Positions 1 through 54,119 of a stretch of DNA of 58,124 nt are shown here, in pieces. The notes below the pieces were generated by a model. The model was not told the DNA's origin. It searched no databases and worked only from the letters and a program-made list of their open reading frames with translations. Origin of the DNA: Macrostomum lignano (lineage: Eukaryota); assembly GCA_002269645.1 (NCBI GenBank), contig NIVC01004146.1, positions 1 through 58,124 of the forward strand. The letters are read 5' to 3'. Positions within the stretch are counted from its first letter, which is position 1; each line of letters begins with the position of its first letter. The position numbers and the translations under genes were made by a program.

Positions 1-477
1 ACTGGAAGCAGCCACCAACCTGGTCCTCCACAGCTTCCTCCATTCGCCGGCGGGCCTCAGCCTCGAACTCCCTGGCCCGTCGGTCCTCGGCTCGAGCCCC
101 GCGGAACACCCTGGCGTCGCTGCCAGGGCTGCGCTCCATGAACTGCCGGGGTACCGCCGGCTGACGAACAGGTGCAGAGCGCCAGCCTTGCCGCCGTCGG
201 GCCGCAGTGAGCTGAGCGACACCGGCATCGGCGAGGCGTCGGCGAAGCCCAGCCGGACTCTTCGGTTGGCAACGCAGCGTCGGGTGCTGTTGCCATGGAG
301 ACGGAGAGCGGCGCTGGCCGGCGCTTCCAGCGGCTGGCAGGCCTCAGAGCAGCCAATCAGTTCAGCCTGGCAGGTGAGCAGCCGGGTGCCCGGTTTGATG
401 AGGCCGGCGGAGGCTGCGCGGCACAGCAGGGGATCCAGCTGTGCGCCGATGCAGTACCAGCCGTCCGTGAGGGTCAC
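1..477 (-). CDS. BRCA2: BRCA2 exon encoding OB1 and the start of OB2/tower
   Basis: Acceptor AG at 478-479. Translates VTLTDGWYCIGAQLDPLLCRAASAGLIKPGTRLLTCQAELIGCSEACQPLEAPASAALRLHGNSTRR..RRYP, then after a frameshift QFMERSPGSDARVFRGARAEDRRARE. Matches human ELTDGWYAVKAQLD..SANSTR..RAYPIQWMEK. Confidence 0.92.
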   Translation of the reverse strand, partial: MTLTDGWYCIGAQLDPLLCRAASAGLIKPGTRLLTCQAELIGCSEACQPLEAPASAALRLHGNSTRRCVANRRVRLGFADASPMPVSLSSLRPDGGKAGALHLFVSRRYPGSSWSAALAATPGCSAGLEPRTDGPGSSRLRPAGEWRKLWRTRLVAASS

Positions 478-3400
478 CTAAATCGGGAAACTAATTAATG
501 CGTCAAATGATCACACGCTGCTTATAAACTACTGACCAACAGTAGCAAGTGGTAAATAGTATAGGCAGAGAAAAATGCTGGCGAGACAATTGTCAGACGG
601 CCAGACACAGACAGGTAGAGGGGAGACACAGACAGGTAGAGGGGAGACACAGACAGGTAGAGGGGAGACACAGACAGGTAGAGGGGAGACACAGACAGGT
701 AGAGGGGAGACACAGACAGGTAAAGGGAGACACAGACAGGTAGAGGGGAGACACAGACAGGTAGAGTGGCGACACAGACAGGTAGAGTGAAGACAGACAG
801 GTAGAGGGGAGACACAGACAGGTAGAGGGGAGACACAGACAGGTAGAGGGGAGACACAGACAGGTAGAGGGGAGACAAAGACAGGTAGAGGGGAGACACA
901 GACAGGTAAAGGGGAGACACAGACAGGTAGAGGGGAGACACAGACAGGTAGAGTGGCGACACAGACAGGTAGAGTGAAGACAGACAGGTAGAGGGGAGAC
1001 ACAGGCAGGTAGAGGGAGACACAGACAGGTAGAGGGAGACACAGACAGGTAGAGTGGCGACACAGACAGGTAGAGGGGAGACACAGACAGGTAGAGGGAA
1101 GACAGACAGGTAGAGGGAAGACACAGACAGCTAGAGGGAAGACACAGACAGGTAGAGGGGAGACACAGACAGGTAGAGTGGCGACACAGACAGGTAGAGG
1201 GGAGACATAAACAGGTAGAGGGGAGGGGAGGATACACACAGTCTGACAGGGCAATGGCAGCAAGGATTGAATAGAAGCCGGGAGTTTCCTAATAAAATGC
1301 AAAGCCAGCAAAGTGAACCTTGAGCTGCTGCTGCTGCTGTTGCGCTGGCTGCTTTCCAGTTTCTGTTCTGTCCGAGTTGCTGTTCCATTGCAGGCTGACC
1401 ACCTGCAGTGCTAGACGCGAGCTGGGCGGAGAGTCGCGCTCGAGAATTCGACGAATGCAGGGTCTGGTTGATGGAGGAATAAGCAGTAATATCTTGGTTC
1501 ATTTTGTTGAGCCGAAATCGAATTTTTATCTTGTTCGAGCAAGACTCTGCTAATTTGTCCCTAAGTACGAATTGTGCGCTAATAACATTTTCAGCTTTCA
1601 GACAATTATAAAGCACAATAATAAAACTATAATTGATTACACCTGCCCTAAATGGGCAGATGTGCAACCACAGCTCAGCCTCAGATATTGCGCGGCGCAT
1701 CTGAAGGCTGCGTACGGCTGTTCAGTCCAAGGACCTGGGGGGGGGTCGCCACACACAGCCTCAATTACCCCAGCTAGTGCTGGCACCCATTTTACAGCTG
1801 GGTGAACTGAAGAAACGCAGAGTTTAGTGTCTTGCTAAAGGACACAAATCGTTCCGGTGAGATCAGGAATCGAACCCCGACCTTCAAGTCGTGAGTCCGA
1901 CGCTCCAACCACTGGCTACAGAGTGCAAGTAGTATACAATAAATATATGCCACAGGAGACAAAGTGCAACAGAGGTCAGTACATTGTACGTAGAAGTGTG
2001 TACGCGAGAGTGTGTTGCATCACCTTGGCAACAAAACTGAGTCTGTAAGATAGAATAGACCCCCTCGTACACACGCAGGAGCATTTTTATTGCTCTACCA
2101 TTTTGCGTCTTATAAGACAAACTACTCAGCGCAAAATGGTAGCAGAAGAAACACAGTAGACAGCCACATCTTTGCACACGCAGTAAATCTCTGCAGAGTA
2201 GAATGAAAATATTTGAGAACAGATGCATTCAAAGTACGCAACGCGCACCGCCTTTTAACAGCTTTCATGTCTCCAGCGCACAGAGCACAGAGCTATTCGA
2301 GTCTAACGGGGGTGTCGAGGGCATAAGAGACGGACTAACAATAGAGCTCAGAGCTTTCCAGAGCTACTCAACAAGGAGGGCTGGGCTGCAAGTGCGCTTG
2401 AGCAGAAGAGCAAGAGAAAGAGATAAAAATTCTTAAATCTTCATGCTTTTTCACCTGCTAACAAAGATAGAAGTTTAGAGTAAAGACTAAAGCCCAATAT
2501 CTGAGTAGTTGAAATCTGAGCTTAACAGAAGCTGACAGAAAACCTGCAGCTCACAGCTGAGGATGCCAGAAGTTCGTCGAATGACCTTGGCCGCTCGGCC
2601 GAAAAATCAAGTGGTTGTGAGTTACTAACTGTCTAACTGTTGGATACTTTACTAAAATGTTGCATTTTAACATTGGTTAATGACACCCAAAATATTTCAG
2701 TTCGGCGTGGTAGACAACACGCCCAAGCTGCAGTTGGACATGACCGACGAGAGGAGCGTAGAGAACCTATCCAGGGTGTGCCACTTTCTCATGCGAGAGG
2801 GCAAGGCGTGCTTGAGAAGCCTATTCGATTCCAAGCATCCAACGGACGAGCTAACGGAACACTTGGCCTCGCCGGACATTCACCGGACGCTGAGGCGACT
2901 TAAGATCAAAGACATGCTAACCGAAGACGACTGGCAGACGCTCTACCCGAAGGAGAAATCTTCCGTGTCCGCTGACAACTACGACCTGCGTCTGCTGCTC
3001 CTGTTAGTAAAATACACCTGCGATGTGACGAAGCCGCAGCCAAACGGCTGGATGGGAGATCCGGAACCTCGCGATGACAGCCAGGGCGCAGCGCTGCAAC
3101 GCCTACTGGGCATTCAACGCGAGCTCGCCTCGCTGCAGACCTTAAAGGCGAGCGCAGCTAACAGACTGTTTAGCCGCATTGCCGAGCAGCTCCAGCGACT
3201 GGGACACTCGGGTGCAGCAGACTGTATGAACGCATACAAGCAGGACACTAGCATGGACGAGACTGAATCGCGCTTCATTCTGGGCGAATTCCTCGTCTGG
3301 TACCGCCAAGAGGTCAGCCAGTTGAAGAGAGAAATCGAAAACCAAGAACGAAAGAAGAAGCGCGAAGAGATTCCTATTCTGCAGAAACGGCTCAAGACGC

Positions 3401-6400
3401 GCGATTTGGACACGTCGGAAACGAAAAAACGCCAGTCGGTTGTTGGAAAGGCGACGATGGACATGAGCGACAAGTCGCGCTGTCAGAGATGGGCTCATAT
3501 CAAAACTGGCATGGTATTAGCGGAGCGCCTCATTCTCGACAAGTACTACGAACAGTTGCTCAACGATGTAAAAGCGGACACAGTGGTTGAGCATCTGATG
3601 AACAAGGAGATTATTACCCAAGACGAGAGCACGGAAATATTTTCTACTCTGCGCAACAACGAGCAGATGTCGACGTTGATCGACTTTCTAGTGCCAAAAT
3701 CTGGCAATGTGTTGGATGAGTTCGTTGAATCGCTGAAACCCAAGAACGAACAGGTGTACCAGCAGATGCACCAGGACTACCAGGCCGCTAAGGCCGACAT
3801 CCTTGCTAATAAACCACGTAAGTATTTATAGTAATTAATAAATCCTCTTTTAAGAGTTGATCATAGGATTTTTCTGTTTCTTCTGTTTCTTCAGAGGGTC
3901 TGCCTTACTGTAACAACATTCTTCGAGAGCGGTACTCCACCGCGTACGCCAAATGGAATCCGATTCCATGGTACACTAAAGTTGAAACAGACATTGCCGA
4001 ATTCTACTGTCAACAGCAGCTGCTCAATTTGAATGGGTAAGTAGCAGGAAAACAGATCAGATCATTAAGCCAGACATAATTTTCAACTTTGATTTCTCAA
4101 TTTAAAATTGCAGAAAGTCAGTCAACGCCTTCCAAGTTTTTGATTATAAGGAAGGCGAAAAAGACCCGCATACAGTAGTCATTGAGGGTGACCCCGGAAC
4201 AGGGAAGAGTACGCTGGCTAAGTATATGGCCTACAAATGGTCTTTGGACGAAAACGTATTCGGACGGCCTTTCCAACTGCTAATCTTGCTTGATCTCAAA
4301 GTGACAGCGCCCACAGTGAAAGTGATGATGATGGAACAGCTTTTCGGAGGCGACTGCAAGCTGGCCGAACGCGAAATTTGGGAGGTGATGAACATGCACC
4401 AGGCGAGCACACTGCTCATCATAGATGGCTACGAAGACAATCTAAATGATGAGATGAAGAGTTTGCTATTTGAGAACATCATGCCGGAACTGCACATTCT
4501 GGTATTTAGTCAGACTAACTTTACAGTCAGACTGATGCACCGCTACCAGCGAAAGGTAATTCTGACCGGATTCGCCAAATCCCAGGCAGAGGAGTACGTT
4601 CAGAAGTACGTCAAACTAGCTAAGAAGCCGTGGGAACACTTTTCCTCGTTTCTAAACAAGCTAGTAGTGGCAAAAAAATCAACTGAGCTTCAAAAGCTGC
4701 TGGATGCAGCGAAAAAGTCGCAGGAGCCGCAGAGGCGACGCGGGTCGTCAGAATCGGCGACATCTGTGACCTCGGCAAAGCCCAGAGACGAGCGACCTTT
4801 GGAGAGGGAAAACACGGACAAAGTCAGCACAAAACTAAGCCGCAGCTCTAGCAAGGGTCAAGGAAACGATCAGCAGCAACAACAGGATTCAAACGGTGAA
4901 AATTCAAATCAAAGCAAAATAGCGTCCCTGCGACATTACTCACAGGTGCCTTTGTACTGTTCGTTCTTCTGCCTGCTGACCGACATGCGCATGAGTATTG
5001 ATCTGAACTCTCCGACAACAATTGTGGAACAGTTTGTCTCCTGCATCAAGTTGAAGCTGATCGAACGCGAAAAGGAGAGTCGCTTCGAAGCGAATCGCGC
5101 CTACGCAATGCTGTCCGAACGCGCTATGGACACCATAAAGAAAGGCAGCGCAACTTTCATTTTGGCCAAGGAGGACCACATGATGACTAAGTTCGGCCTG
5201 ATTCAACTGGCTACAAACCTCACCGCAGAGGATAACCAGCGCTACATGTTTGGCAATCGTCTTATTCAAGAGTATCTCGCCGCGAAAAATCTAGACACTA
5301 GTGGAACAGATGAAGCTAGCCGCTTCTTCCAGAACATGAGTATGACTCCGATCTCCTACAATGTTGTTGTGTTCTACTGCAGCATCCGCAAGTCGGACAA
5401 CGACACGCCGGCCACCCGGGAACTGTTTGCAAAGATACTGCAGTATAACAAACGGCGAGGCAAAGCGAGTCGCATGAAAATGCCAGCGGCTACGTCGCCA
5501 GAAGACAGTCAACTGGTCGAGGGCAAGATCATGGACTACCAGCTCAGTCTGGAATGCGTGGCGGTCATGGACATGGCCCGCAGAGATCTTGGCAAGAAAA
5601 TTGTTGAATCGCTGCCAGAGCGATTCACCGTGAAGCACGAGGGCATCATTCCGAGATTGTCGCTTACAGGCCTGTCCAAGATGATCAAGTTTAACCACAC
5701 GACCATCCAAGAGGTGGACTTGCGCCTAGATCTGCTAGCCAAAGAGACGCTTGAGGCATACAAAAGTCTGGCTACCGCAATGAAAACGAACGTTCACATC
5801 AAGACGCTCCGCATCTACTGGACAGAGAAGGATCTAATGGCAGACTTCCTTCAAACCGTGTGCTGTCCGGAGCCAGAGGACCCCGCCAATTCTACAGGCC
5901 AGATGGAAATCAGGCGTAAGAAGCCCGATCAGACCGGCTTTCATCTGAAGAATCTTGAGTGCATCGACGAGTCAGGAAAGAAGCTGGACCAGTTGTCGCC
6001 AAAAATGCTAAACAACATGCGCGAAGCCTGCTCGAACATGACTAAACTAGAAACGTTCGCATTTCAAAATTGTCACCACATGTCGCTGGTTGGAAGCATA
6101 ATAAAAAATTTGCCAACTAAATTTGCGGACAACCTGCGCATTCTAGACTTTTCTGGCTGCCAGATGAGCATAGTGGCATCGCAGGATCTCAACGGAAAGC
6201 TGATGGAGAGCAAGAGTCTAGAAGGCCTGATCTTGGCTAACCTCAAGATTGATGCGATGGCCTTTAACACTTTCATCGCCGCATTCTCTAGCAATCGGAC
6301 CATTGTCCTGCTGGATTTGAGCGGAATCCGCCTGGACAATGTCTGCTTCTTCTCTCTATCCGAAGCGCTGAAAATTAATAACAAGCTTGAGAAGCTATTC

Positions 6401-9400
6401 TTACGCCAGGTGCCAATGGACACGAGAGCTTGCAAAGAGGTGGCTAGAATTCTAAAGATTAATAAGATGCTGAAACTTCTCACGGTCACGCAGGAGATCG
6501 TCAGCGAGGAGGGTCGCCGGGTTCTGGGCGAGGAGAGCCAGACGGAGACGCGCAAGAATCGGGCGGTCGTGGACGGCATCGGGGTGGAGTATCGGCAGAG
6601 ACCGACGAACGAGAGGGCCAATACTAAGAGAAACCCGCTGTCAGTCAAGTGAGGAAACCATGGCCGATGATGAAGACGCATCCTAACTATTATTATCAAA
6701 TAACAGTGAATTTCAATAACTTTTTAAAAGTTGTGAATAGTTTTTGTTTAGCACTGCCCTCCTTCGTTAATACGGCCCACAAGAACTTTGTAACTGTTTG
6801 CACAGAACGAGAAATCCTAGAATTTAAGCGATATCTTACTGAGACAAAGATGATTTTTTCTAAAGTAAAAACTGTACGTAAAACATACAGTATTGTTTTA
6901 AGTTTATTTATTCTCTATAATAACATTAAGCTAAATGATACAATATAATTTTCAATTTTTTAACAGACAGCTTTGTAACAGACTAACAGGAAAAGTTCTT
7001 GTCAATTTTTCTAGAAAAAATATAAACAAGTGAATAATAGTTTTTACACTTGGTTGGTTTTAAATGAAAATTTAAGACAGTGGGTACTTTAAACAAGATG
7101 ATGATGAAGCGGCCCCAGTCGCTAAACACAGAATCCCAGCTCCAGTTCCATATAAGACCGATCGTCCTTCTCTCTTGCCGTAGAGGGAGAAGATTAATTT
7201 GCCTGTCGATAAGAAGCCGAGCGACGAAGTTTGGGGTTGCTATGGGGGGAGGGGGGGTTAATGAATCGAATGGAGGCAAAGTGTCAGACAGTAGTGAGAT
7301 AGATAGGACCCATTCAATCGCGGCATCGATAGCGCTCACACTTATACTGTAAGAACTATATAGATTCTATATTCGAAAGTCTTGAGCGCATTGGCAGTTT
7401 GATTAAAATGCCCATAGCTATAGAGGTTGAAGCCACCAAACTCGCGCTGTCCCATCTTATCGTTGGGAGGGGGAGCCATAAATGGGAAAGAAAGAGAGAG
7501 AGAGACCAACAGGAGCTAGATCGGATAGAGAGAGAGCGAGTGAGCAATTATAAGAAACTGGGGAATGTGAAGTTCCGAATGAGAATAAGGCGGAAATGAA
7601 TAGGCCAGAGGCAAATGGTGAGGGGTGATATATAGGGATTCTGAGCAGTATAGACTCAAATAGAATAGGAATGATAGAGATAGAAGAAAGTAAAATGCGG
7701 AGGCACCAAATTCCAGAGCTTCGACCGGTTCGAAGAGTTGATTGGTTGCAAAGAGGCACTGATTTATATACGAGCGTGTATATAATAATACATAGAAGGG
7801 AGAAGACTGCAGGGGCTTGGGATTGAATTTTGTTCGGTTTGCTTTTCAATGGGAGATAATGACAGTGCATAAGAATGAGGAGGTGGTTGGGAGAGGGCAA
7901 GGAGACTCAGAACTTGGACTGACAACTCTTATTCAAGCCTTACATTTTTGGACAACTATAAAACTTGATTGTAGCTTAGTGTCTTTTAACTTCTCTTTTA
8001 TTACTAGGTCGCATTTATATTGCTCAGAATGCAGTTAATTGTGTTTAAGGAATTAGCAATCTGCGCTCCTTCTGTTGGTGACGCAACAAAGAAAGGAATA
8101 ACAGTTTTGAGTAAACTATATGTAAGTAACTACATGTAAGTCTTTTTATATGCAAACCGACAGCTCAGCCGCAGCTATTTCGCGGCGCATTTGAAGGTTG
8201 CGTACGGCTGTTCAGTCCAAGGACTGGGGGGTCGCCACACACCCTCAATTACCCCAGCTAATGCTGGCAACCATTTTACAGCTGGGTGAACTGAAGCAAT
8301 GCAGAGTTAAGTGTCTTGCTCAAGGACGCAAATTGTTTCAGTGGGATCGGAAATCGAACCCCTGACCTTCAAATTGTGAGTCCGACGCTCTAACCACTAG
8401 GCTACAACAGCCGTAGTACAGTCAAGTCAGTATTGCTAATCTCTTCAGGAAAATGATGTTTAAAGGAAAGCAGCATCAGTCTTGAGAAACAGCTATCTAG
8501 CTGAAGATATGAGATTCCCTATGAGTTTTTTTGGCTCAAAACATCTGAGTAACCACCAAGAGCCACAGAATTTCAGCAATTCCCCCCAATGAGCCTTGAC
8601 ATCTCAGCATTTCCCACACGAACCTTGGCATGTCCCAATTACCACACTGTCATTTTAAAATGTTTTCTCTGTGTTTTTGGCATGATTTTCTACACACTTT
8701 AGTTCCTTATCTGAACCTTTCTGAATTTAGGGCAATGGGAATCACACTTTAGGGCAATGAGAATCACACTTTAGGGCAATGGGAATCACACTTTAGGGCA
8801 ATGAGAATCACACTTTAGGGCAATTAGAATCACACTTTAGGGCAATGAGAATCACACTTTAGGGCAATGGGAATCACACTTTAGGGCAATGAGAATCACA
8901 CTTTAGGGCAATGAGAATCACACTTTAGGGCAATGAGAATCATACTTTAGGGCAATGAGAATTACTTTATACTTAAAAGTTCAAACAAAATGACTCGAAA
9001 CAGTCAGAAACTCGCAGACTGGGATAGAGGAAGGTTCTTGTTTTTTGCGTTTTTATTTGTTTACTCAATCCTAGCACGCCAAGTTCTAGCTGTGGGCCTC
9101 CTTGACACGAGGGAGAAAGGGGAAGAAAAGGAAAAAAGGAAGGACGAGGTGCGTCAGTCGAAGGTACACACAGTCGAGCACGGGCGAATAAAATCGAAAG
9201 CTGGTGTGATAGGCCTTGAGACGCAGCCAACAAATGGCCTTTAATATTTTAGCATTGCGGCAGGAAAATCCGCTGTAATCTGACACCGGCAATACAGTTT
9301 ACAAACGAGAGCTGGCCAGCCCACTAAACCAGCTGTCGGATTTCCTCCGCAAAGATGAGCGACAATGAGGAACGAATCTGCCTCGTACCAAAAGACGACG

Positions 9401-12400
9401 ACGAATGGAAGCAGCAAAAGCCGACGGTGACACAAGGAGACACGATCGATGCTACCATAGTAGAGGAGGCTTCAACTTCTTCATCGACGGCTGCAGTCAC
9501 TACGGCACTGTCAGCAACAGCATCGGCACCATCGGCAGCCTCAAACAGCAGCAGCAGCAACAACAAGCGAAGGAGAAAGCTAAGAAGAGCCGGTACAGTT
9601 ATTGGTGGAAGCAAGAGATTTTCGAGCCATGGTGGCGGCGGGAGCGGCAGCGGCGGAGTGGCTGGAGGCAGACGGGTGCTGGCTAAGAAGGCCAGTCTGG
9701 TTGCTATCGCATCGTCCAAGAGGCACACAAGTAAAAAAGTGAGTAGATCGGAGGCCACAAGATGTTGCATCAAGCAGAGGGGGGGGGGGGTTGTAGCCTA
9801 CTGGTTAGGGGGTTCGATTCTTGACCCACCCAGAACAACTTGTGTCCTTGAGAAAGACACCTCAACTCTGCATTGCTTCAGTTCACCCAGCAGTAAAATG
9901 GGTGACAGCATTACCTGGGGTAATTGAGGGCTTGTGTGGCGATGGCAACCCCCAGATTTTAGACTCAACAGCCGCAAGCAGCCTTCAGATGCGCCACGCA
10001 ATAGCCAGTTGTACGAGCTACATCTGCCTATTAAGGCAGGTGTAGTAAAAAAGCTGTCAGTGAAGATGCTATGATAGTGGAGATGAGATCTCACTGGAGA
10101 TCAGATATTAGTAGATAACATGAGAAAGAAATAGGGTTAAGGTGAAGGTAAAGATTATACATCCGTGAATATAAGAGCTCAGTGGAGATTCAATATCAAT
10201 AAGGACGAGATTTCATTAGGGATGAAGGTTGAGATGTCAGTAGGGATAAGGGGATAAGTTCTCAATATGTCATTTCATCACTCGTAGGTAGCTGTAGCCG
10301 ACTGAAACTATAAATAATGATCAAATATGAATACAAGTCAATAAGATTGCAATCAAACAATTCTTTTTCAAAACTATCAATTGCTCGGCCGTATTAATTC
10401 CCCTATAGAACATTAGGGCGCCCAATTATGCTGAAGAAGAGATAAAGAAATTGACTATGAAAAAAGGATGGGAAACGCGCATATTTTTATTTGCATATAA
10501 CAACGCTTGTCCCCTAATTGCGATTGAAATTCAATTATCCAGTACTAAATTTTCTATTTTGAGTTATGGCACGCATTATAGCTATATTGGATTAGAAGAT
10601 AAGCAAATATATATTGGAATAAATTCGGCAAGGGGTGCTTAGGAAAATGAGTAGTGGTTGGGAGTACCAACTAGTTTTCTCCTCTATTCTCCGATTCCAA
10701 CAATCTATAGTGCGAAATGCCAAATTCAGTGTGTTAAGGAAATGATGACGGCTCGAGTTACGAGCCGGTTTCTGGAGAGGATTTAAAAAGCGCCAAACAG
10801 TCCTTCTCCCGTCAACTCACGTCTAGTTGGCAGATACCTGGGTACACGCAAGAGACACCCGCTGAGGACTTAGAGAACTCTTATTCAACTCGCATCAAAA
10901 CTTCTTACAGATATCGGATCATTTTAACAGCATCAACAAGCTGGCTCAGAAGAGGGCTCTGATGCGTTCGAAGCAAATTGACCAGCTGTTGCTGACTGAC
11001 CAGGAAGCCAAGCGCAAGGAGATTCACCTGCTGCTGATTGGTTTGTTTTTTACTCTAGTACAACACGACACACGTTAAAACAGTTTCTTTCTTAAACATC
11101 TAATAATTCCAAATACCTCGACGTCTTAAGTGTGTCTACCATATCCTGAAGTGTGTCTACCACAGCCTGAAGTGTGACTACCACAGCCTGAAGTGTGTCT
11201 AACATAGCATGAAGTGTGTCTACCACAGCCTGAAGTGTGTCTCTCGACAGACTAAAGTGTTTTTACCTCAGACTAAAGTGTCTCACGGCCTCTGTAGTGT
11301 CTCGACAGGATAAAATATGTCTAGTACAGTCTACAAGTGTGTCTATCAATCAAAGTGTGTCTCACCATAAAGTTTAAGTATATTATGCACTTAAAACGAT
11401 TACAGTATATATTAATATTATCCGTTGTTCAGCGCTATTCCGTTAGATTAATTTTTTAACTGCCGATTTTTTTTCAACAAAAACGTATATTAACGTTAAA
11501 TCCATGTTTCACTTTTTCACATTAACCTAGGCGGCAACGGATGCGGCAAGAGTACGTTAGTGAAACAGTTTCGAATTCACTACGGAGACGCATTCCCGGA
11601 CGAGCAACGCAAGGCGCTGATCGGTCAGGTGCTGGAGAATCTAGCAGATGCGGTGCACATTGTGCTGGAGAATATGCGCACTAGGGACATCTGGTTTCAC
11701 GATCCCTACATCAAGGTAGGAAGGTAGCGGTTTTTATTCTACATCAAAGTTTGATTGCAGCTGTTGTTGGTCAAAGGGACTGTTTCGAAATTCTAGAAAT
11801 TATCTATCAGAGGACTTGGGCCAGAAGGCTTTCGCTCGATTCCAGGCGTAGCTACATCAAATTTGAATCCACATATTGGGATATTTTTGCTCGACCCATG
11901 GCAGACAAAGTCGGGGCTGCAGTGCATCTTTAGTGCGCCCCTCATGTCTCTGTACTTGTGTAGCTTTGGCTTTAGGGAACCGCAAAAATTCAAGGGTTCA
12001 CTTCCTCAGTGCCAGGGTTTTGGAGTTGGTTTTCTTGAACAAGCCCCAGGCAAATATTCATACACCAGACCCGAATTCTGTGGCCCCGCATGGAATGCAA
12101 CTCACACGGAGATTTAAGACCATTGTTAATCGCGCACCCAACCAGGACATGGTTGAAGAATTCCAAGCCTACTGTCCGAAATTCAACAGTCTAATATTTC
12201 GCCACTCCGGCAAACAAGTGGACATTGAGAACAGCATTCACTACGCGCACGTTGATTTTGTGGACGACGATACGCTGGCATCGGCGCCGACTGACACTGA
12301 CCTGCCTAGCAGTTGCGGTCACGACAACGCGCATGAACTACTATTATTCGATGTTAGCTACCGAGAGGCCAGGCGAAACAACTTAGACTTGAACGGACTT

Positions 12401-15400
12401 GACGGACTGGCTTCGGGTGGGGACGGCAACGGAGGCGACACGGCGTCAGCTTCGTTAATAATCTATTATAATACGCAGGTGAGAAAGACGCGTCTCACCG
12501 GATGAGTCTTTTTGGAGCATCGTATTAAATAGATAAAGAATAAGAAGTCCACGAGGATTATAAAAAACCAGTTATTTTCTTCTTATCATGTTTTCTTCTA
12601 CATGTAAAATGAAGTCATTCTACAAGCGCACATTAAGATCTTAGTACATTTTGGTCCTCATAAATGTGAATTAATGTAACTATAAGGTCATTTCAAGCAT
12701 GTGAATGCACATTTTTGTCCTTGTTTAGCGCGGCCCGGCGCCTCTAAAGGCTGCGTACGGCTGTTCAGTCCAAGGACTGGCACCCATTTTACAGCTGGGT
12801 GAACTGCAGCAATGCAGAGTAAAGTGTCTTGCTCAAGGACACAAATTTAAACTCAAGGTCCTTTCTATCCGATATATAAAAACACCGCAGGGCCTCGAGG
12901 ACAGCCAGTCCGAAGCGGACGACCGAGACCGTGAGCGAGAGACGCACACGGCCAGGACCTACATTAGCAGTCTGGAATTTGGCAAATTCTCCAGACGTCA
13001 AAGACGCCAACAACTGCAAAACCTGAGCGGAGAGGATGCCGGACTGAACCAGCTGGACGATGGCAGCTCCGACAGCAGCTGCGCCAGGCTGGTTGAGCAC
13101 CTTCACCTAGGCGACGCGCACGACACCGACTCCTCGGGAGGTCGGCGCGCCTCGTCAACCCTGGACGGCTTGCCGCCTCACGACGAAATCGTGTTCTGCT
13201 TCGTGCGACACATAAAGAACTGCATTGTGCAGCCGGAGTTCGAATTGTGCCTCGCTGATCACGAGTACTTCAAGCCGGAGATTACCTACGCCGAGATGTA
13301 GTGAGTTACTTCGTTTCTTTTTTGAGGGTCTGACCGACAGTCTAGCTGTCCTCTTGATTGTTAATCTGTTTTTTTATATTCAATAGTGACTAGTTCAGTA
13401 GGGCAGCGATTCTCATTGCCCTAAAGTGTGATTCTCATTGCCCTAAAGTGTGATTCTCATTGCCCTAAAGTGTGATTCTCATTGCCCTAAAGTGTGATTC
13501 TCATTGCCCTAAAGTGTGATTCTCATTGCCCTAAAGTGTGATTCTCATTGCCCTAAAGTGTGATTCTCATTGTCCTAAAGTGTGATTCTCATTGCCCTAA
13601 AGTGTGATTCTCATTGCCCTAAAGTGTCATTCTCATTGCCCTAAAGTGTGATTCTCATTGCCCTAAAGTGTCATTCTCATTGCCCTAAAGTGTCATTCTC
13701 ATTGCCCTAAAGTGTGATTCTCATTGCCCTAAAGTGTGATTCTCATTGCCCTAAAGTGTGATTCTCATTGCCCTAAAGTGTGATTCTCATTGCCCTAAAG
13801 TGTGATTCTCATTGCCCTAAAGTGTGATTCTCATTGTCCTAAAGTGTGATTCTCATTGCCCTAAAGTGTGATTCTCATTGCCCTAAAGTGTCATTCTCAT
13901 TGCCCTAAAGTGTGATTCTCATTGCCCTAAAGTGTGATTCTCATTGCCCTAAAGTGTGATTCTCATTGCCCTAAAGTGTGATTCTCATTGCCATAAAGTG
14001 TGATTCTCATTGCCCTAAAGTGTGATTCTCATTGCCCTAAAGTGTGATTCTCATTGCCATAAAGTGTGATTCTCATTGCCCTAAAGTGTGATTCTCATTG
14101 CTATAAAGTGTGATTCTCATTGCCCTAAAGTGTGATTCTCATTGCCCTAAAGTGTCATTCTCATTGCCCTAAAGTGTGATTCTCATTGCCCTAAAGTGTG
14201 ATTCTCATTGCCCTAAAGGGTGATTCTCATTGCCCTAAAGTGTGATTCTCATTGTCATAAAGTGTGATTCTCATTGCCCTAAAGTGTGATTCTCATTGTC
14301 ATAAAGTGTGATTCTCATTGCCCTAAAGTGTGATTCTCATTGCCCTAAAGGGTGATTCTCATTGCCATAAAATGTAATTCTCATTGCCCTAAAGGGTGAT
14401 TCAACATCAGTCTGATTACAGTTTTCAAGTTAGCGACAATTTTAACTTAAAACACTAAAAACTTACTAAAATGTTTAAGGCTCTGTAAAATAAAGATCAC
14501 CAATCTAAATAAATCTACAGCTTTATACAACACGTGGATCGCGTCATTCAAGAGGACTATGTGCCAACGCTGCAAGATATTTTGGCCATTCGCAAGCCGA
14601 GCGACGCAGTCAGACAGACCGAATTTCAAATTGCTGGCACCACTTTTCGGTGAGCTTAAAGCGGATGCAGAATGTTCTGTGTCTACTTTCCTGTCGCTTC
14701 TGTGTCCACCTCTTTGTACTCGCTTTGTCCACCTCCCTGTCGCTGTAGTGTCCACCTCTTTGCATCCGCTGTGTCCACCTCTCTGTCGCTGTTATGTCCA
14801 TCTTCCTGTCACTGTTGTGTCCATCTTCCTGTCACTGTTGTGTCCATCTTCCTGTCACTGTTGTGTTCATCTTCCTGTCGCTGTTATGTCCATCTTCCTG
14901 TCACTGTTGTGTTCATCTTCCTGTCGCTGTTATGTCCATCTTCCTGTCACTGTTGTGTTCATCTTCCTGTCGCTGTTATGTCCATCTTCCTGTCACTGTT
15001 GTGTCCATCTTCCTGTCGCTGTGTGTGTCCACCTCTCTGTCGCTGTTATGTCAATCTTCCTGTCGCTGTTATGTCCATCTTCCTGTCACTGTTGTGTCCA
15101 TCTTCCTGTCACTGTTGTGTCCATCTTCCTGTCACTGTTGTGTCCATCTTCCTGTCACTGTTGTGTTCATCTTCCTGTCGCTGTGTGTTTCTACCTCTCT
15201 GTCGCTGTTATGTCCATCTTCCTGTCACTGTGTGTGTCCAGCTCTCTGTCGCTGTGTGTGTCCAGCTCTCTGTCGCTGTGTGTGTCCAGCTCTCTGTCGC
15301 TGTTGTGTCCATTTCCCGGTCGCTGTTGAGTCCACCTTTTTGCATCCGCTGTGTCCACCTCCCAGCCTCCAATGTGTCTATTTCCCTAAATTCCCTAAAT

Positions 15401-18400
15401 TCAACTCCCTAAAATGTTTTGTGTCCACCTCCTTGAATCTGAATCATCTGTGTACACCCCCTGTCTATCTGTGTACACCCCCTGTCTGTGTACACCCCCT
15501 ATCTGTGTACACCCCTGTCTATCTGTGTACACCCCCTGTCTATCTGTGTACATCCCTGTCTATCTGTGTACACCCCCTGTCTATCTGTGTACACCCCCTG
15601 TCTATCTGTGTACACCCCTGTCTATCTGTGTACACCTCCTGTCTATCTGTGTACACCCCTATCTGTGTACACCCCCTGTCTATCTGTGTACACCCCCTGT
15701 CTGTGTACACCCCCTATCTGTGTAAAACCCCTGTCTATCTGTGTACACCTCCTGTCTATCTGTGTACATCCCTGTCTATCTGTGTACACCCCCTGTCTAT
15801 CTGTGTACACCCCCTGTCTATCTGTGTACACCCCTGTCTATCTGTGTACACCTCCTGTCTATCTGTGTACACCCCTATCTGTGCGCACCCCCTGTCTATC
15901 TGTGTCCGACCTCCTTGGCTTTTTCATCACATCTGGATATCATCAGCCAAGTCAATCAATTTATCTGCAATAAAAATCCGCCCAATTTTCATTCAAAACG
16001 ACAGCATGATCGATCTGGCAGGCCAGAGAAGCCAGCGGCACAAGTGGATTCACTATTTCGAAGACGTCAACGCAGTGCTATTCGTCAGCTCTCTGTCTGG
16101 CTTCGGCGAGCTTGTCGAAGAGGAGGACAGAACGGTGAGAAACCACGCACGTCTTTCTAAATCATTAATCATCATAAATCATGTCATAAACAGACAATCC
16201 ATCCGTACATTCTCCAGACAATTAAAATGTCCGACTGTCTATCAACATTCAGCGAGATCATCAGCAACAAGTACCTGTGGAAGAAGGATTTCTTTCTGTT
16301 CTTAAACAAATTGGACGTGTTCGAGCAGAAGTTGAAGTCCAAGAGTATTACAGGACTGTTTCCGGACTATCGAGGTGAGATTTTTCAGAGAAATCGCCCC
16401 TGGTTATCCAAGCAAATCACCCTGATTATCCATCAAAATCGCCCTGATTATCCATCAAAATCGCCCTGATTATCCATCAAAATCGCCCTGATTATCCAAG
16501 CAAATCGCCTTGATTAACCAGGAAAATCGACCTGATTATCCATCAAAATCGCCCCGATTATCCATCAAAATCGCCCTCATTATCCATCAAAATCGCCCTG
16601 ATTATCCATCAAAATCGCCCTCATTATCCATCAAAATCGCCCTGATTATCCATCAAAATCGCCCTGATTATCCAAGAAAATCGCCCTAATTATCAAGAAA
16701 ATCGCCCTGGCTATCGAAGAAAATCGCCCTGATTATCCAAGAAAATCGCCCTGATTTTCCAACGAAATCTCCCACATTATCCAACGAAATCGCCATTTTT
16801 TTCTTGAAAATCGCTCCGATTATCCAAGAAAATTACCCTGATTATTCAAGAAAATCACCCTGATTATCCAAGAAAATTGCCCTGATTATCTGAAAAAATC
16901 GCCCCTAATATAGATAACAACGAACAAACAGAATCGAGACATCAAGTTTGATCCTCCTCAATCGTCCTCAATCTCCAGGCCACGACGAGGTGAACCAGTG
17001 CGCGCAGTACATCAAGGAGAAGTTCACCAGCCTCATACCGAAGAACATGCCAAAGTCCAAGAGAATCTACACGCACCTCATCACGGCCATAGACATTGAC
17101 AGCATGAAGCCCCTGTTCAAAGAAGTGCTGCATCGAATCGCTGAGGCGAACTTGAAGAAGAGCATCACGATTTTTTAGTCTAGCTTGCAAATTCTATGAA
17201 CTAAACAGTCAAATTACTAACTTATGTACTTTTGTCACCAAAGGGATCAAACAGGCTTATTATACGCAACAGTACCTTGCACCTTGCAAATCAAATTGTT
17301 GCGACTTTGTATAAATGTAACTAAACACTAATAAATACATAGATACTGACACAAACAAACAATCGATTGACACAAACCATTACTCTTAATAACACAAATC
17401 ATTACTCTACTGACACAAATCATTACTTTACTGACACAAATCATTACTTTACTGACACAAATCATTACTTTACTGACATAATTATTACTTTACTGACACA
17501 AATCATAAACCTACTGACACAAATAATTACTCTACTGACACAAATCATTAATCTACTGACACAATTTATAAACCTACTGGCACAAATCATTAATCTACTG
17601 ACAGAAATCATTAATCTACTGGCACAAATCATAAACCTACTGACACAAATCATTAATCTACTGGCACAAATCATAAACCTACTGACAGAAATCATTAATC
17701 TATTGACACAAATTATTAATCTACTGACACAAGTTATTAATCTACTGACACAAATCATAAACCTACTGACACAAATCATTAATCTACTGACACAAATCAT
17801 TAATCTACTGACACAAGTGATTAATCTACTGACACAAGTTATTAATCTACTGACACAAATCATTAATCTACTGACACAAATCATTAATCTACTGACACAA
17901 GTGATTAATCTACTGACACAAGTTATTAATCTACTGACACAAGTTATTAATCTACTGACACAAATCATAAATCTACTGACACAAATCATAAACCTACTAA
18001 CACAAATCATTAATCTACTGACACAAGTTATTAATCTACTGACACAAATCATAAACCTACTGACACAAATCATTAATCTACTGACACAAATCATTAATCT
18101 ACTGACACAAGTGATTAATCTACTGACACAAGTTATTAATCTACTGACACAAATCATTAATCTACTGACACAAATCATTAATCTACTGACACAAGTTATT
18201 AATCTACTGACACAAATCATTAATCTACTGACACAAATCATTAATCTACTGACACAAGTTATTAATCTACTGACACAAGTGATTAATCTACTGACACAAG
18301 TTATTAATCTACTGACACAAATCATAAATCTACTGACACAAATCATAAACCTACTGACACAAATCATTAATCTACTGACACAAGTTATTAATCTACTGAC

Positions 18401-21400
18401 ACAAATTTTAAATCTGCTCACACAATATAAGAAGCGGTCAATCCCACATAAGCAAGACAACAACAGGATCCACTAGTTAAAGCACTCACCGGTGTCCTAA
18501 AACGAACTCTCTATCATAGCGATACCTCAGCTGGTGCAGCAGATGTTCCGGGCTGAAATAATTCACCCCAAAATCTTCATCGGGCGAAGCTGCGCCTCTG
18601 GCCGACATTCGCCACACCAGCAACCGGTAATGATTGCGAAGCCAAGCCTCTGTGAGGGCCGGGGCTCGAATCCCAGGCTGAGAGCGCAACTTCGTGAGCA
18701 GCTCCGACCAACCCGTACCGTCAGAGAAACGAAAATCGCCGGCCAATTCAAAATCCATGGTCGGCTGGAGACCGGCGGAGTCGGGAATCGGGGAGGCAGA
18801 CAGGCTGACTCGCTCGCCCGATGCGGCAAGGCGGAGTCTGGCCAGGCTGAGTTCGCCGAGGCCCTTCTCCGTGGCCTGCTAAGGGGGCGCAAAAACATGA
18901 TTGAACTGCATTCACCTTTGACGGACGTCTGCGCTGCTCGACAGCTTTGTTAGCAGGAAAAATTTTATGTTTAAGTTTGAGGCAGACCGACCCAGCAACT
19001 GAGGATCTGGGAGGCTGGTGGGCCATCAAGTGAGGATCTGGGAGGCTGGCCCAGCAACTGAGGATCTGAGAATGGAGGCCCAGCAACTAGGGACCTGGGA
19101 GGGTTGCCCAGCAACTGGGGATCTGAGGGGCTGGCCCAGCAACTGTGGATCTGAGAATGGAGGCCCAGCAACTGTGGATCTGAGAATGGGGGCCCAGCAA
19201 CTGTGGATCTGAGAATGGGGGCCCAGCAACTGAGGACCTGAGAATGGGGGCCCAGCAACTGTGGATCTGAGAATGGAGGCCCAGCAACTGTGGATCTGAG
19301 AATGGGGGCCCAGCAACTGTGGATCTGAGAATGGGGGCCCAGCAACTGAGGACCTGAGAATGGGGGCCCAGCAACTGTGGATCTGAGAATGGGGGCCCAG
19401 CAAATGTGGATCTGAGAATGGGGGCCCAGCAACTGTGGATCTAAGAATGGGGGCCCAGCAATTGGGGATCTAAGAATGGGGGCCCAGCAACTGGGGATCT
19501 GAGGGGCTGGCCCAGCAACTGGGGATCTGAGGGGCTGGCCCAGCAACTGAGGACCTGAGAATGGAGGCCCAGCAACTGTGGATCTGAGAATGGGGGCCCA
19601 GCAACTGTGGATCTGAGAATGGGGGCCCAGCAACTGGGGATCTGAGAATGGGGGCCCAGCAACTGTGGATCTGAAAATGGAGGCCCAGCAATTGGGGACC
19701 TGAGAATGGGGGCCCAGCAACTGTGGATCTGAGAATGGGGGCCCAGCAACTGTGGATCTGAGAATGGGGGCCCAGCAACTGTGGATCTGAGAATGGGGGC
19801 CCAGCAACTGTGGATCTAAGAATGGGGGCCCAGCAATTGGGGATCTAAGAATGGGGGCCCAGCAACTGGGGATCTGAGGGGCTGGCCCAGCAACTGGGGA
19901 TCTGAGGGGCTGGCCCAGCAACTGTGGATCTGAGAATGGGGGCCCAGCAACTGAGGACCTGAGAATGGAGGCCCAGCAACTGGGGATCTGAGAATGGGGG
20001 CCCAGCAACTGTGGATCTGAGAATGGGGGCCCAGCAACTGGGGATCTGAGAATGGGGGCCCAGCAACTGTGGATCTGAAAATGGAGGCCCAGCAATTGGG
20101 GACCTGAGAATGGAGGCCCAGCAATTGGGGATCTGAGAATGGAGGCCCAGCAACACAGAATCTGTAACCCGCAGTTCACACAAACCGCAGCAGCAGTCGG
20201 AGCAGTCGGAGTCTGCGGCTGCAACTGTCGCCGAGGAGCAGCGGCAGGCGAGGGCGCGGGCTTGAACCGGTAGAACGCACCCTTAGTAGCCGGAGTCGCC
20301 GAAGACGCCGAAGCAGCCCCACCTACTGGCGTGTTCAGCCGAGGCGTCCGATGCTGCACCAGCATGGGGGTGGTCCGTGGCCTCGGCATCTGCTGTCTGG
20401 GAGTGGACATGGAATTCGGAGTCTGCGGACTTGGTTGAGCAGCTTTGGTCGAAGGATTTGCCGGAGCGGAATCCTCATTCTCAGCGGCCGCAGCCAGGGC
20501 TTTGGCCCGAGCCATGGCGCTGGCCGAGACCTGCACAGTTCGACCGCCCGCTGTGGAGAAGCCGCCGCCAGCCCCGCCACTAGAAGTACTTGGAGCTGTG
20601 GCAGCCGAGCTGCATCTGGGACTGTCTTTATCGGCTTCATCAAGCAGTTTCTGTGCTCGCTTCAACGCCGAAGCTGAAACGCCAACCGAACGACCGCCTG
20701 CGGTGGAGAAGCCGGCCGGACCCTGATTGACAGGCCTGTTGTTACTAACGGGTTCCAGTTCCGCGTCCTCGGCTAGCTGCCGCGCCTTACGCAGAGCGGA
20801 CGTCGATACTTGCAAAGATTTACCACCGGCGGTTGAAAACCCACCCTTCATATCGACGCTTTCTGGCGACAATTTCCTACCAGATTCGGCAAGATTCTCG
20901 TTGCTCCGATGGTTGGCCGCCTCATCCTCCAATTGTTTGGCTTTTCGCATGGCCTCAGCTGAGAAGCTGACCAATCTGCCTGAGGCTGTACAGAACCCAG
21001 CAGGATTTTTCAAAGCACTGTTCACACCGCTGGAAGGTTTACCAATGTTACTTCGCAGCCAGCTAGTGTCCTCGTCCTCCTCTTCGAGGTCTTTGTCTCT
21101 AAGATCTTTATCCGTTAGGTCTTTGTCCCTAAGATCATTATCCGTTAAGTCTTTGTCCCTGTCCAGCCTAGCTGCACTTTCAGCCAGCACATTCTGTGTA
21201 AAGTTCAAGCTGCAGTCGGCTAGAAGAGCCTCGACGCCTTCTTTCACGTCGCGAATTTGCGTAGCAGTCAAATCGCCGTAATCCATTTCGCCTACTGAGT
21301 TCGAGTCGGTTGCTGCTAGCTTATTTTGTGCTTCGTCTGTCAGCCGGACAGGTGGAACTGGGTCAGGACAGTTGCTACGCGGCTCTGGTGGGCTGGTGCG

Positions 21401-42754: not shown

Positions 42755-43016
42755 ACAGAAGAGCAGGAGGAATCAATATTTGAGCTCTGAAAAAAAGTTT
42801 CCTAAATCTGTAAAAACTTTGAGGCAAAACTGTGTTTCAACTGCATAAGAAGAGTAATTGAACCGTCAGCTTCTCCATCCCTCATGGATTAACCAATCAG
42901 ATAAGAGCGGAATATCTGTGCATCCAGTAACTGCACTGTGAAGCTATAAATCAAGGACTTGTGAGTGGATGCCAAGTTTAACCGCCTAAAAATCTGAGTT
43001 CTAAATAGCTTCAACA

Positions 43017-54000: not shown

Positions 54001-54090
54001 ATGGTTGCTGACTGGATGGTTGCTGACTGGATTGTTGCTGACTGACGGCTGCTGACTGGACGGATGCTGACTGGATGGATAGTTGCTGAC
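48100..54090. repeat. ~6 kb 15-bp satellite (GGATGGTTGCTGACT) with GGAT/GGAC stutters and kb-scale higher-order duplications
   Basis: Rare variants recur at ~1.4 kb and ~1.05 kb spacing; a 469-bp duplication lies near the right end. Confidence 0.98.
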
Positions 54091-54119
54091 TAAATAGTTG
54101 CCGACTTTAGAATAGCAAG

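What the first reader, a model, noticed from the sequence alone, without database searches (positions are those of the whole stretch)
1464..18489. A 17 kb BRCA2 intron contains two complete antisense genes (an NLR and a giant G-alpha)
The exon ending at 18490 (CAC CG|gtgagt) joins in phase to the exon starting at 1463 (cag|A) and restores the contiguous motif YRYDRE..HR-PCIRRILERD. Between them lie a 4-exon NLR and a 9-exon G-alpha, both on the opposite strand. Double nesting inside the DNA-binding domain of a core repair gene is unusual. It implies transcriptional collision or mutually exclusive expression, for example stem cells versus differentiated cells; this part is inference.
Basis: partly seen in the sequence, partly recalled or inferred. 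Interest (0 to 1): 0.75.

Follow-up and report, generated by a model that had tools for sequence, protein, structure and literature searches.

The report
Two genes nested in BRCA2 intron
In the flatworm Macrostomum lignano, one 17 kb intron of the DNA-repair gene BRCA2 really does hold two complete genes on the opposite strand (an immune-type NLR and an enlarged G-protein alpha subunit), but genes nested in introns are common in animals, so this is a sound annotation and not a surprise.

Summary
The window is a whole 58 kb contig of the Macrostomum lignano Mlig_3_7 assembly. On the minus strand, the BRCA2 helical-domain exon ends at 18490 (CACCG|gtgagt). The next exon starts at 1463 (cag|A). 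The spliced product aligns without a gap across the junction to the mammalian BRCA2 DNA-binding domain (E 1.7e-50).

The 17,026-nt intron holds two plus-strand genes:
- A 4-exon HEPN-CARD-NACHT-LRR gene. It reproduces GenBank protein PAA48443.1 (1283 aa) exactly.
- A G-alpha gene with 8 secure exons plus at least one N-terminal exon. Pfam covers positions 3-331 of 333.

The same gene order is found on two other contigs that span the whole intron, and on partial contigs, so it is not a misjoin.

Corrections:
- The G-alpha is about 640 aa, enlarged but not giant.
- The window's OB1 exon has a 1-nt homopolymer deletion, either a consensus error or a dead copy.
- No RNA evidence for the BRCA2 junction could be reached.
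- Antisense nested genes are routine in metazoans and do not imply collision or mutually exclusive expression.

Verdict: a real feature, a new example of a known arrangement, low interest.

The parts
20186..21634 (-). BRCA2 exon with four BRC (RAD51-binding) repeats. The 5' limit is not defined: 21634 is only the start of the open frame.
   Evidence: Pfam PF00634, 4 stretches, 103 bits. Candidate donor GCG|gtttgt after 20186 is in phase 0 and matches the acceptor at 18878.
18879..20185 (-). BRCA2 intron, mostly a 29-bp satellite (18991-20154) that happens to stay open in frame.
   Evidence: TRF: period 29, 40 copies. About 80% identical arrays lie on more than 30 other contigs.
18490..18878 (-). 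BRCA2 helical-domain exon, ending CAC CG|gtgagt.
   Evidence: Pfam PF09169 positions 115-183 of 187. The donor is conserved in 4 genomic copies.
1464..18489 (-). The 17,026-nt BRCA2 intron of the finding (GT at 18489-18488, AG at 1465-1464). About 34% is coding sequence of the two nested genes and about 23% is tandem repeats.
1319..1463 (-). BRCA2 exon of 145 nt (R)PCIRRILERD...QQQQLK, the start of OB1. The first base completes the Arg codon. It ends in phase 0 at AAG|gttcac.
   Evidence: The Pfam OB1 profile starts at its first residue. The acceptor 35-mer is identical in all 8 genomic copies.
20..477 (-). BRCA2 OB1 exon (VTLTDGWY...EDQ, donor CAG|gttggt after base 20). It carries a 1-nt deletion in the C run at 148-151 that shifts the frame.
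   Evidence: Pfam OB1. Alignments to C262, C3379 and C870 show C5 there, against C4 in the window and in C4236.
2563..6652 (+). Nested gene 1: an NLR with domains HEPN_DZIP3 - CARD - NACHT - RI-type LRR, 1283 aa. Coding exons 2563-2616, 2701-3817, 3895-4036, 4114-6652.
   Evidence: Exact translation match to P0015/PAA48443.1 (BOX15_Mlig026612). Pfam. The C-terminus matches ribonuclease inhibitor and NLRP LRRs, E = 4e-9.
9355..17178 (+). Nested gene 2: a divergent G-protein alpha subunit, about 640 aa. Exons 9355-9738 (uncertain), 10911-11040, 11531-11715, 12119-12478, 13053-13300 (the acceptor may be 13098), 14521-14649, 16005-16134, 16218-16374, 16979-17178.
   Evidence: tblastn with GNAI1. 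Splice and phase analysis. Pfam G-alpha 3-331 of 333, 263.6 bits. Best PDB matches are Gq/Gi/Go, E about 2e-48.
17344..18425 (.). 21-bp satellite (51 copies) that ends 64 nt from the BRCA2 donor.
   Evidence: TRF.
13408..14402 (.). 22-bp satellite in a G-alpha intron. It is the reverse complement of the array at 8726-8962. Several redundant contigs break here.
   Evidence: TRF. Ends of contigs C3379 and C871.

Best explanation
This is a genuine long intron of the Macrostomum lignano BRCA2 gene. It separates the helical-domain exon from the first OB1 exon, and it hosts two independent, intact, antisense protein-coding genes.

Shown: the exon order, the splice-site consensus, the phase, the homology across the join, the completeness of both nested reading frames, and the same layout on several paralogous or allelic contigs.

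Inferred: BRCA2 pre-mRNA is transcribed through the 17 kb and the spliceosome joins 18490 to 1463. The NLR and the G-alpha are transcribed from their own promoters on the other strand and spliced separately. Nothing is shared between host and guests apart from DNA.

The layout most likely arose neutrally, by gene insertion or duplication into an intron that also collected satellites. It predates the recent genome multiplication of this species. Interference between the converging polymerases is possible but is neither required nor implied.
For: Junction:
- Searches show GT and AG at the stated bases and the split Arg codon.
- One search gives a single alignment to mouse/rat BRCA2 across the join, E = 1.7e-50.
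- One search shows the OB1 profile starting at the exon's first residue.

Not a misjoin:
- C4236 spans OB2-OB1-exon X-NLR-G-alpha-helical exon, collinear with the window, with an intron of 19,391 nt.
- C262 has the same order, with an intron of 20,631 nt.
- C3379 and C4237 cover OB2 through the 5' half of the G-alpha. C870 and C871 cover the two ends.
- Donor and acceptor are conserved in all copies.
- The window's helical exon differs from the other three copies at about 10 sites, so these are distinct molecules. By my own count on the alignment, about 8 of the differences are synonymous and 2 are not.

NLR: exact match to a GenBank protein. The GenBank annotation was derived from genome-guided transcript assemblies (PMC5730564), so the NLR is transcribed.

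G-alpha: open frame through 8 GT-AG introns with full Pfam coverage. GxxxxGKS, the switch-I Arg, DxxGQ and NKxD are all present (alignment). A 55-64% identical paralog with the same exon pattern lies on C1174/C3517.

Context: the assembly is Mlig_3_7. About 70-85% of that genome is present in 3 paralogous copies that differ by about 2% (PMC10733133, PMC5730564). This explains the redundant contigs.
Against: - No transcript or protein record containing the BRCA2 helical exon of this species was found in either protein library. The 18490/1463 splice therefore rests on sequence logic and homology, not on RNA.
- The window's OB1 exon is frameshifted (C4 against C5), and so is C4236's. At least these two copies may not encode a full BRCA2.
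- C262 and C870 each carry two tandem copies of exon X + OB1 (plus all or part of the NLR), so the true transcript structure there is ambiguous.
- UTRs and promoters of the nested genes were not mapped, and the G-alpha has no transcript support from these tools.
Confidence: 0.85

Rival explanations
1. The window's copy is a decaying or non-functional BRCA2 paralog of this neopolyploid genome. The nested layout would still be real, but here the 'host gene' would be a pseudogene, and a functional BRCA2 would be encoded by another copy, such as C262 or C3379.
For: A 1-nt deletion in the OB1 exon shifts the frame in C4146 and identically in C4236. C262 (both copies), C3379 and C870 have the intact C5 run. 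The genome holds 3-4 copies of most loci (PMC10733133), so one copy can be lost.
Against: The difference is a single base in a homopolymer, in a PacBio/Canu assembly, within 150 and 1,200 nt of a contig end. The surrounding 520 nt are otherwise 100% identical to C262. All other exons are open. By my count, differences in the helical exon are mostly synonymous. C3379 overlaps the window's first 14 kb at about 100% identity and has C5.
Confidence: 0.12
2. BRCA2 is split here into two transcription units: BRC repeats + helical domain, and OB folds, the latter perhaps started by spliced-leader trans-splicing at 1463. The NLR and G-alpha would then be intergenic and not nested.
For: 38.8% of M. lignano genes are SL trans-spliced (PMC5730564). 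No annotated full-length BRCA2 protein of this species was found. At 17 kb the intron is more than ten times the species' mean intron length of 1.1-1.4 kb (PMC5730564).
Against: The junction splits a codon (CG|A), and the join restores a sequence that is contiguous in mammalian BRCA2. A consensus GTGAGT donor sits exactly at the end of the helical exon in all four copies. The downstream part has no in-frame start codon at its beginning. In solved BRCA2 structures (1MIU, 1IYJ), the helical domain and OB1 form one unit.
Confidence: 0.04
3. Assembly artefact: the contig falsely joins two loci across one of its satellites, so the two BRCA2 halves are not really 17 kb apart.
For: The contig is short (58 kb) and is one of several redundant contigs. 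Satellites make up 23% of the intron. Other contigs break at the 22-bp array 13408-14402. The published assembly is described as redundant and error-prone in copy number (PMC10733133).
Against: Three contigs with different variants and different satellite lengths span the full interval in the same order. Partial contigs agree on both sides. A switch between paralogous copies inside a satellite would not change the gene order.
Confidence: 0.03

Closest known systems
Nested (intronic) protein-coding genes of metazoans. Examples: Drosophila 2mit inside a timeless2 intron (PMC3786989), LRRTM genes inside alpha-catenin introns (PMC3933685), and, from general knowledge and not tested here, human NF1 intron 27b with OMG, EVI2A and EVI2B on the opposite strand.
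   Same: Whole guest genes, with their own introns, lie inside one host intron on the opposite strand. More than one guest can share an intron. The host can be a tumour-suppressor or repair gene.
   Different: This host/guest combination (BRCA2 with an NLR and a G-alpha) and this species have not been described in the papers I could search. Conservation outside M. lignano is untested.
Mammalian BRCA2 DNA-binding domain (PDB 1MIU, 1IYJ, 1MJE).
   Same: The helical domain end, OB1 and Tower start align over 273 residues, E = 1.7e-50. There are four BRC repeats upstream. Downstream exons on C262 continue through the Tower region into what corresponds to the start of OB2.
   Different: The helical domain is much shorter: only Pfam positions 115-183 match. 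OB2 and OB3 were not recognised by Pfam on raw ORFs. From memory, the human exon 17/18 boundary lies 10 codons upstream in the same phase, so the intron position is probably not shared. This was not tested.
CARD-NACHT-LRR receptors (NOD1/NOD2-type NLRs).
   Same: CARD, NACHT and ribonuclease-inhibitor-type LRRs occur in the canonical order.
   Different: There is an extra N-terminal DZIP3-type HEPN domain. LRRs were seen only by comparison with PDB sequences, not by Pfam. There is no close paralog family in this genome: only the copies of this locus score E <= 1e-20.
Heterotrimeric G-protein alpha subunits, and the 'extra-large' forms (XL-alpha-s, plant XLGs).
   Same: The G-alpha domain is full length with nucleotide-binding and catalytic motifs. 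There is added N-terminal low-complexity sequence.
   Different: It cannot be assigned to the Gs, Gi/o, Gq or G12 class: Gq, Gi and Go score alike. The P-loop is GGNGCGKS, not GAGESGKS. There is no N-terminal MG(C) lipidation motif. An insert of about 150 aa sits in the helical domain. At about 640 aa it is well below XL-alpha-s or XLG size.

Membership tests
Nested intronic gene arrangement | The guest's coding region lies wholly inside one intron of the host, with no shared exon. | tested here: met
   NLR CDS 2563-6652 and G-alpha CDS 9355-17178 lie inside intron 1464-18489. The nearest host exon bases are 1,100 and 1,312 nt away. UTRs were not mapped.
Nested intronic gene arrangement | The flanking host exons belong to one transcript. 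| tested here: inconclusive
   This is supported by the split codon, the GT-AG sites, the phase and the contiguous homology. No cDNA or protein record for this BRCA2 was reachable.
Nested intronic gene arrangement | The guests are independently expressed genes. | tested here: inconclusive
   The NLR equals a transcript-derived GenBank protein (PMC5730564). For the G-alpha there is only an intact frame and a conserved paralog. Seven candidate models are not in the protein collection.
Nested intronic gene arrangement | The layout is real in the genome and not an assembly join. | tested here: met
   The same order is found on C4236 and C262 (full span) and on C3379, C4237, C870 and C871 (partial).
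BRCA2 | BRC repeats. | tested here: met
   PF00634, 4 stretches, 103 bits against a cut-off of 20.3.
BRCA2 | Helical domain followed by OB1 and Tower. | tested here: met
   PF09169 43-46 bits, PF09103 109 bits, Tower weak at 18 bits and below cut-off. PDB alignment E = 1.7e-50.
BRCA2 | OB2 and OB3 folds and the C-terminal region. | tested here: inconclusive
   These lie outside the window. On C262 the downstream ORFs align to mouse BRCA2 through Tower and into what corresponds to the start of OB2, but Pfam finds no OB3 on the raw ORFs.
NLR (NACHT-LRR receptor) | A central NACHT NTPase with a P-loop. | tested here: met
   PF05729, 56-57 bits. GDPGTGKS is present.
NLR (NACHT-LRR receptor) | C-terminal leucine-rich repeats. 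| tested here: met
   phmmer to ribonuclease inhibitor E = 4.4e-9, and to NLRP14/5/9/1 E = 1e-5 to 1e-3. Pfam LRR models were not significant.
NLR (NACHT-LRR receptor) | An N-terminal effector (death-fold) domain. | tested here: met
   CARD PF00619, 36-37 bits, plus HEPN_DZIP3 PF18738, 63-68 bits.
Heterotrimeric G-alpha | A full G-alpha domain (Ras-like plus helical). | tested here: met
   PF00503 positions 3-331 of 333, 263.6 bits against a cut-off of 48.8.
Heterotrimeric G-alpha | Catalytic and nucleotide-binding motifs: GxxxxGKS/T, switch-I Arg, DxxGQ, NKxD. | tested here: met
   GGNGCGKST, AIRKPS, DLAGQ and NKLD are seen in the alignment to Gq/Gi. GTP binding itself is not testable here.
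Heterotrimeric G-alpha | Membership of a named class (Gs, Gi/o, Gq, G12, Gv). | tested here: inconclusive
   Gq, Gi, Go and Gz chains all score E = 1e-48 to 1e-45. No tree was built.

The most novel reading that the evidence does not exclude
The antisense NLR/G-alpha pair is kept inside the BRCA2 intron because convergent transcription through it tunes BRCA2 output. For example, BRCA2 would be high in neoblasts and germline and the guests high in differentiated cells. This would make it a selected regulatory module, retained in all subgenomes after polyploidisation.
Probability: 0.04. Interest if true: 0.5.

Novelty: new member of a known kind. Interest (0 to 1): 0.15.

Why it matters
The main value is for annotation. 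No BRCA2 protein of this species turned up in the two large protein collections I searched, and this work supplies exon coordinates for the part of the gene on this contig. It also shows that the large gap in the gene is a gene-bearing intron and not an assembly break.

It flags three practical problems for anyone designing knock-outs or RNAi against BRCA2, the NLR or the G-alpha in this transgenesis-capable stem-cell model:
- There are 3-4 near-identical copies of the locus.
- Two of those copies carry a frameshift in OB1.
- Two contigs carry tandemly duplicated BRCA2 exons.

Biologically it adds one more host/guest pair to a common class. It also documents a canonical CARD-NACHT-LRR receptor with an extra HEPN domain, and an unusual enlarged G-alpha, in a flatworm.

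Tried and rejected
- The search for homologous proteins with the concatenated G-alpha returned nothing, probably because low-complexity words filled the candidate list.
- Exact look-up of seven alternative G-alpha models found none in the collection, so the 5' exon and the e5 acceptor stay open.
- The look-up of encoding contigs for the NLR protein returned nothing, because records of the window's own genome are withheld.
- A BRCA2 search by words and an exhaustive HMMER search with the helical exon found no relative above 39% or 35% identity. No close species was available for a synteny test, and there was no transcript-derived BRCA2 of M. lignano.
- The locus of the best ENA hit (P0002) is a distant eukaryote in which the helical domain and OB1 lie in one uninterrupted ORF. 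It says nothing about flatworms.
- Supplement searches for Mlig026612, Mlig016872 and BRCA2 in three M. lignano expression papers gave no gene-level expression values. BRCA2 appears only as a name in GO-enrichment lists, and I did not determine which lists.
- Rfam and tRNA scans of the window were empty.
- I considered and rejected the idea that the 887-aa ORF 18971-21634 is one exon. Its lower 1.2 kb is a dispersed 29-bp satellite.
- Python could not read other contigs of this genome, so copies were compared through the genome search, DNA alignment and pattern searches.


Full report
**Source of the window**

The window is the whole contig C4146 (58,124 bp) of a 764 Mb assembly in 5,269 contigs. 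The NACHT-containing ORF is 100% identical to GenBank proteins of Macrostomum lignano with locus tags BOX15_Mlig026612g2/g3. Size and contig number match the Mlig_3_7 assembly of the DV1 line: 764 Mb, 5,270 scaffolds, Canu on PacBio reads, 15% tandem repeats, and 180 Mb in duplicated blocks at >=95% identity (PMC5730564). A later study found about 70-85% of that assembly in three paralogous copies, differing by about 2.2% overall and 1.1% in coding sequence, and found that many 4-copy blocks are assembly redundancy (PMC10733133).

**The junction**

On the minus strand the helical-domain exon ends ...GGA CAC CG at 18490, followed by GTGAGT. The next exon begins with A at 1463 after ...caaccag.

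The split codon CG|A is Arg. The following exon (1463-1319, 145 nt) ends in phase 0 at AAG|gttcac. The OB1 exon starts in phase 0 at 477 after ...gatttag.

Pfam places BRCA-2_helical in 18486-18878, four BRC repeats in the ORF above it, and BRCA-2_OB1 in 1-477. On the spliced product the OB1 profile begins at position 1, exactly at the first residue of the 1463 exon. The spliced sequence aligns as one block of 273 residues to rat and mouse BRCA2 (1IYJ, 1MIU, 1MJE), E = 1.7e-50, with no gap at the join. No extra exon is needed or missing between the two.

**Upstream part of BRCA2**

The 887-aa ORF 18971-21634 is not one exon. Its lower part is a 29-bp satellite (18991-20154) that occurs at about 80% identity on dozens of contigs. 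A phase-0 donor after 20186 matches the phase-0 acceptor at 18878.

**Nested gene 1, the NLR**

Four coding exons reproduce the 1283-aa annotated protein letter for letter: 2563-2616, 2701-3817, 3895-4036 and 4114-6652. The introns are 84, 77 and 77 nt.

The domains are HEPN_DZIP3, CARD and NACHT. The C-terminal 340 residues match ribonuclease inhibitor and the LRR regions of NLRP14/5/9/1.

The GenBank annotation of this genome comes from genome-guided transcript assemblies (PMC5730564), so this gene is transcribed. The 848-aa NACHT-LRR exon is intact and 99-100% identical on six contigs. It has no other close relative in the genome.

**Nested gene 2, the G-alpha**

A tblastn search with human GNAI1 found six pieces. 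Inspection of splice sites and phases links eight exons from 10911 to 17178 by GT-AG introns into one open frame. An upstream ORF starting at ATG 9355 has phase-compatible donors at 9738 and 9803.

A 640-aa model gives Pfam G-alpha positions 3-331 of 333 at 263.6 bits. The best solved relatives are Gq, Gi and Go alike, at E about 1e-48.

Compared with ordinary G-alpha subunits of 350-400 aa it has:
- an N-terminal Ser/Gly-rich extension of about 130-150 aa;
- an insert of about 150 aa in the helical domain;
- the P-loop GGNGCGKS.

The switch-I Arg, DLAGQ and NKLD are kept. 'Enlarged and divergent' describes it better than 'giant'. A 55-64% identical paralog with the same exon pattern lies on C1174/C3517, which argues for a functional family. 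None of seven candidate full-length models is in the protein collection, so the first exon and the e5 acceptor (13053 or 13098) remain uncertain.

**Is the layout real?**

Searches of the whole assembly with the G-alpha, the NACHT exon, and the OB1 and OB2 exons, with the helical-domain Pfam model and with the DNA around 1300-1700 gave the following picture.

| Contig | Content, in order |
|---|---|
| C4236 (29.9 kb) | OB2, OB1, exon X, NLR, all G-alpha exons, helical exon. Collinear with the window. Intron 19,391 nt. |
| C262 (427 kb, BRCA2 on the plus strand) | Helical exon at 354.6 kb, G-alpha at 357.5-366.2 kb, NLR at 370.3-372.8 kb, exon X at 375.5 kb. Intron 20,631 nt. |
| C3379, C4237 | OB2-OB1-exon X-NLR-5' half of G-alpha, then they end. 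|
| C870 | Ends inside the NLR. |
| C871 | Starts in the G-alpha and runs to the helical exon. |

The 35-nt acceptor region is identical in all eight copies. The donor is GTGAGT in three copies and GTAAGT in C262. The window's helical exon differs from the other three copies at about ten sites, so these are different molecules and not one sequence assembled repeatedly. By my count on the alignment, about eight of those differences are synonymous and two are not. Differences in intron length lie in the satellites.

**Caveats**

1. The window's OB1 exon has CCCC at 148-151. C262 (both copies), C3379 and C870 have CCCCC. C4236 shares the deletion. The frame shifts after ...VSRRYP. Both affected sites lie near contig ends, and the flanking 520 nt are otherwise identical to C262, so a homopolymer consensus error is likely. 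A real dead copy in this multi-copy genome cannot be excluded.
2. No protein or transcript record containing this BRCA2 was found. The published GenBank gene set excluded transcripts overlapping repeats (PMC5730564), which may explain the gap. The splice is therefore inferred.
3. C262 and C870 each carry two tandem copies of exon X + OB1, with part or all of the NLR. Including both copies in one mRNA would shift the frame, because the unit starts in phase 2 and ends in phase 0. One copy must be skipped, or the duplication is an assembly artefact.

**Composition of the intron**

About 34% is coding sequence of the two guests and 23% is tandem repeats: six arrays with 21-23-bp units (one is also reported at period 46). 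It also holds copies of a SINE-like element. The NLR start codon is 1,100 nt from the BRCA2 acceptor. The G-alpha stop codon is 1,312 nt from the BRCA2 donor. The mean intron in this species is 1.1-1.4 kb (PMC5730564), so the guests and the satellites account for the unusual length.

**Interpretation**

Nested genes are common. Intronic genes make up about 6% of Drosophila genes, and most of them are protein-coding (PMC3786989). About 63% of human nested genes are antisense to the host. [quoted passage not shown] Several guests in one intron of a tumour-suppressor gene is also a textbook case: NF1 with OMG, EVI2A and EVI2B (from general knowledge). Which protein domain the flanking exons encode has no bearing on an intron.

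Transcriptional interference can occur at nested loci (PMC3192792), but nothing here shows it. A BRCA2 homolog is named in GO-enrichment gene lists of the M. lignano neoblast/germline study (PMC5173321, supplement). I could not determine which list, and found no expression values for the NLR or the G-alpha.

**Verdict**

The feature is real and correctly described in structure. It is a new instance of a well-known arrangement in a redundant, repeat-rich assembly. Its value lies in annotation and in practical use for the M. lignano community. It is not conceptually new.

Noticed in passing
window 148-151 (also C4236 about 1187-1190): The BRCA2 OB1 exon has a C4 run where four other copies have C5. 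This shifts the frame after ...VSRRYP. Two short contigs share it, and in both the site lies near a contig end.
   Followed up: yes
G000 C262:375.2-382.9 kb and C870:266.7-310.3 kb: There are tandem duplications of BRCA2 exon X + OB1. In C262 the unit also includes the 5' part of the NLR, with 5.9 kb spacing. In C870 it includes OB2 and the whole NLR, with 37.5 kb spacing. Splicing both copies into one mRNA would break the frame. It is not known whether the duplications are real or artefacts.
   Followed up: partly
window 18991-20154; also between OB1 and OB2 on C262 (382.86-383.32 kb): A 29-bp satellite stays open in all reading frames, so it fuses with neighbouring exons in ORF lists. It encodes ...PPFSDPQLLGPHSQI... 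It occurs in two different BRCA2 introns and, at about 80% identity, on more than 30 other contigs.
   Followed up: partly
window 8726-8962 and 13408-14402: The same 22-bp satellite occurs in opposite orientations on either side of the 5' half of the G-alpha gene. Contigs C3379 and C871 end or begin at this array.
   Followed up: partly
window about 1617-1900, 9808-10044, 12729-12830: This is a SINE/MITE-like dispersed repeat, whose ORFs read ...LNSALLQFTQL / GELQQCRV... Its first roughly 85 nt (window 1617-1700) match dozens of contigs at 84-93% identity.
   Followed up: no
G000 C1174:93.0-96.1 kb and C3517:40.7-43.7 kb: A paralog of the enlarged G-alpha, 55-64% identical, has the same exon pattern and also an insert in the helical domain. 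This suggests a small lineage-specific G-alpha family.
   Followed up: no
window 54123-57784 (-): Helitron-type element: PIF1-like helicase (97 bits) and a Helitron_like_N/Rep domain (78 bits) in adjacent ORFs separated by stops.
   Followed up: partly
window 43005-44658 (+) and 33793-34128 (-): Two other genes lie on the contig: a DEG/ENaC (ASC family) channel in two large ORFs, and the first exon of ARPC5 (p16-Arc). A coiled-coil gene with satellite-filled introns lies at about 25.7-30.6 kb (-).
   Followed up: partly
window 48000-54100: A block of about 6 kb of short tandem repeats is strongly strand-asymmetric (GC skew +0.45 to +0.48) and open in several frames (Ser/Gln/Pro-rich). It is probably a satellite and not a coding sequence.
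   Followed up: no
whole assembly G000: Unrelated G-alpha loci mostly appear as triplets of near-identical hits on different contigs. This fits the three-subgenome structure reported for this species (PMC10733133).
   Followed up: yes
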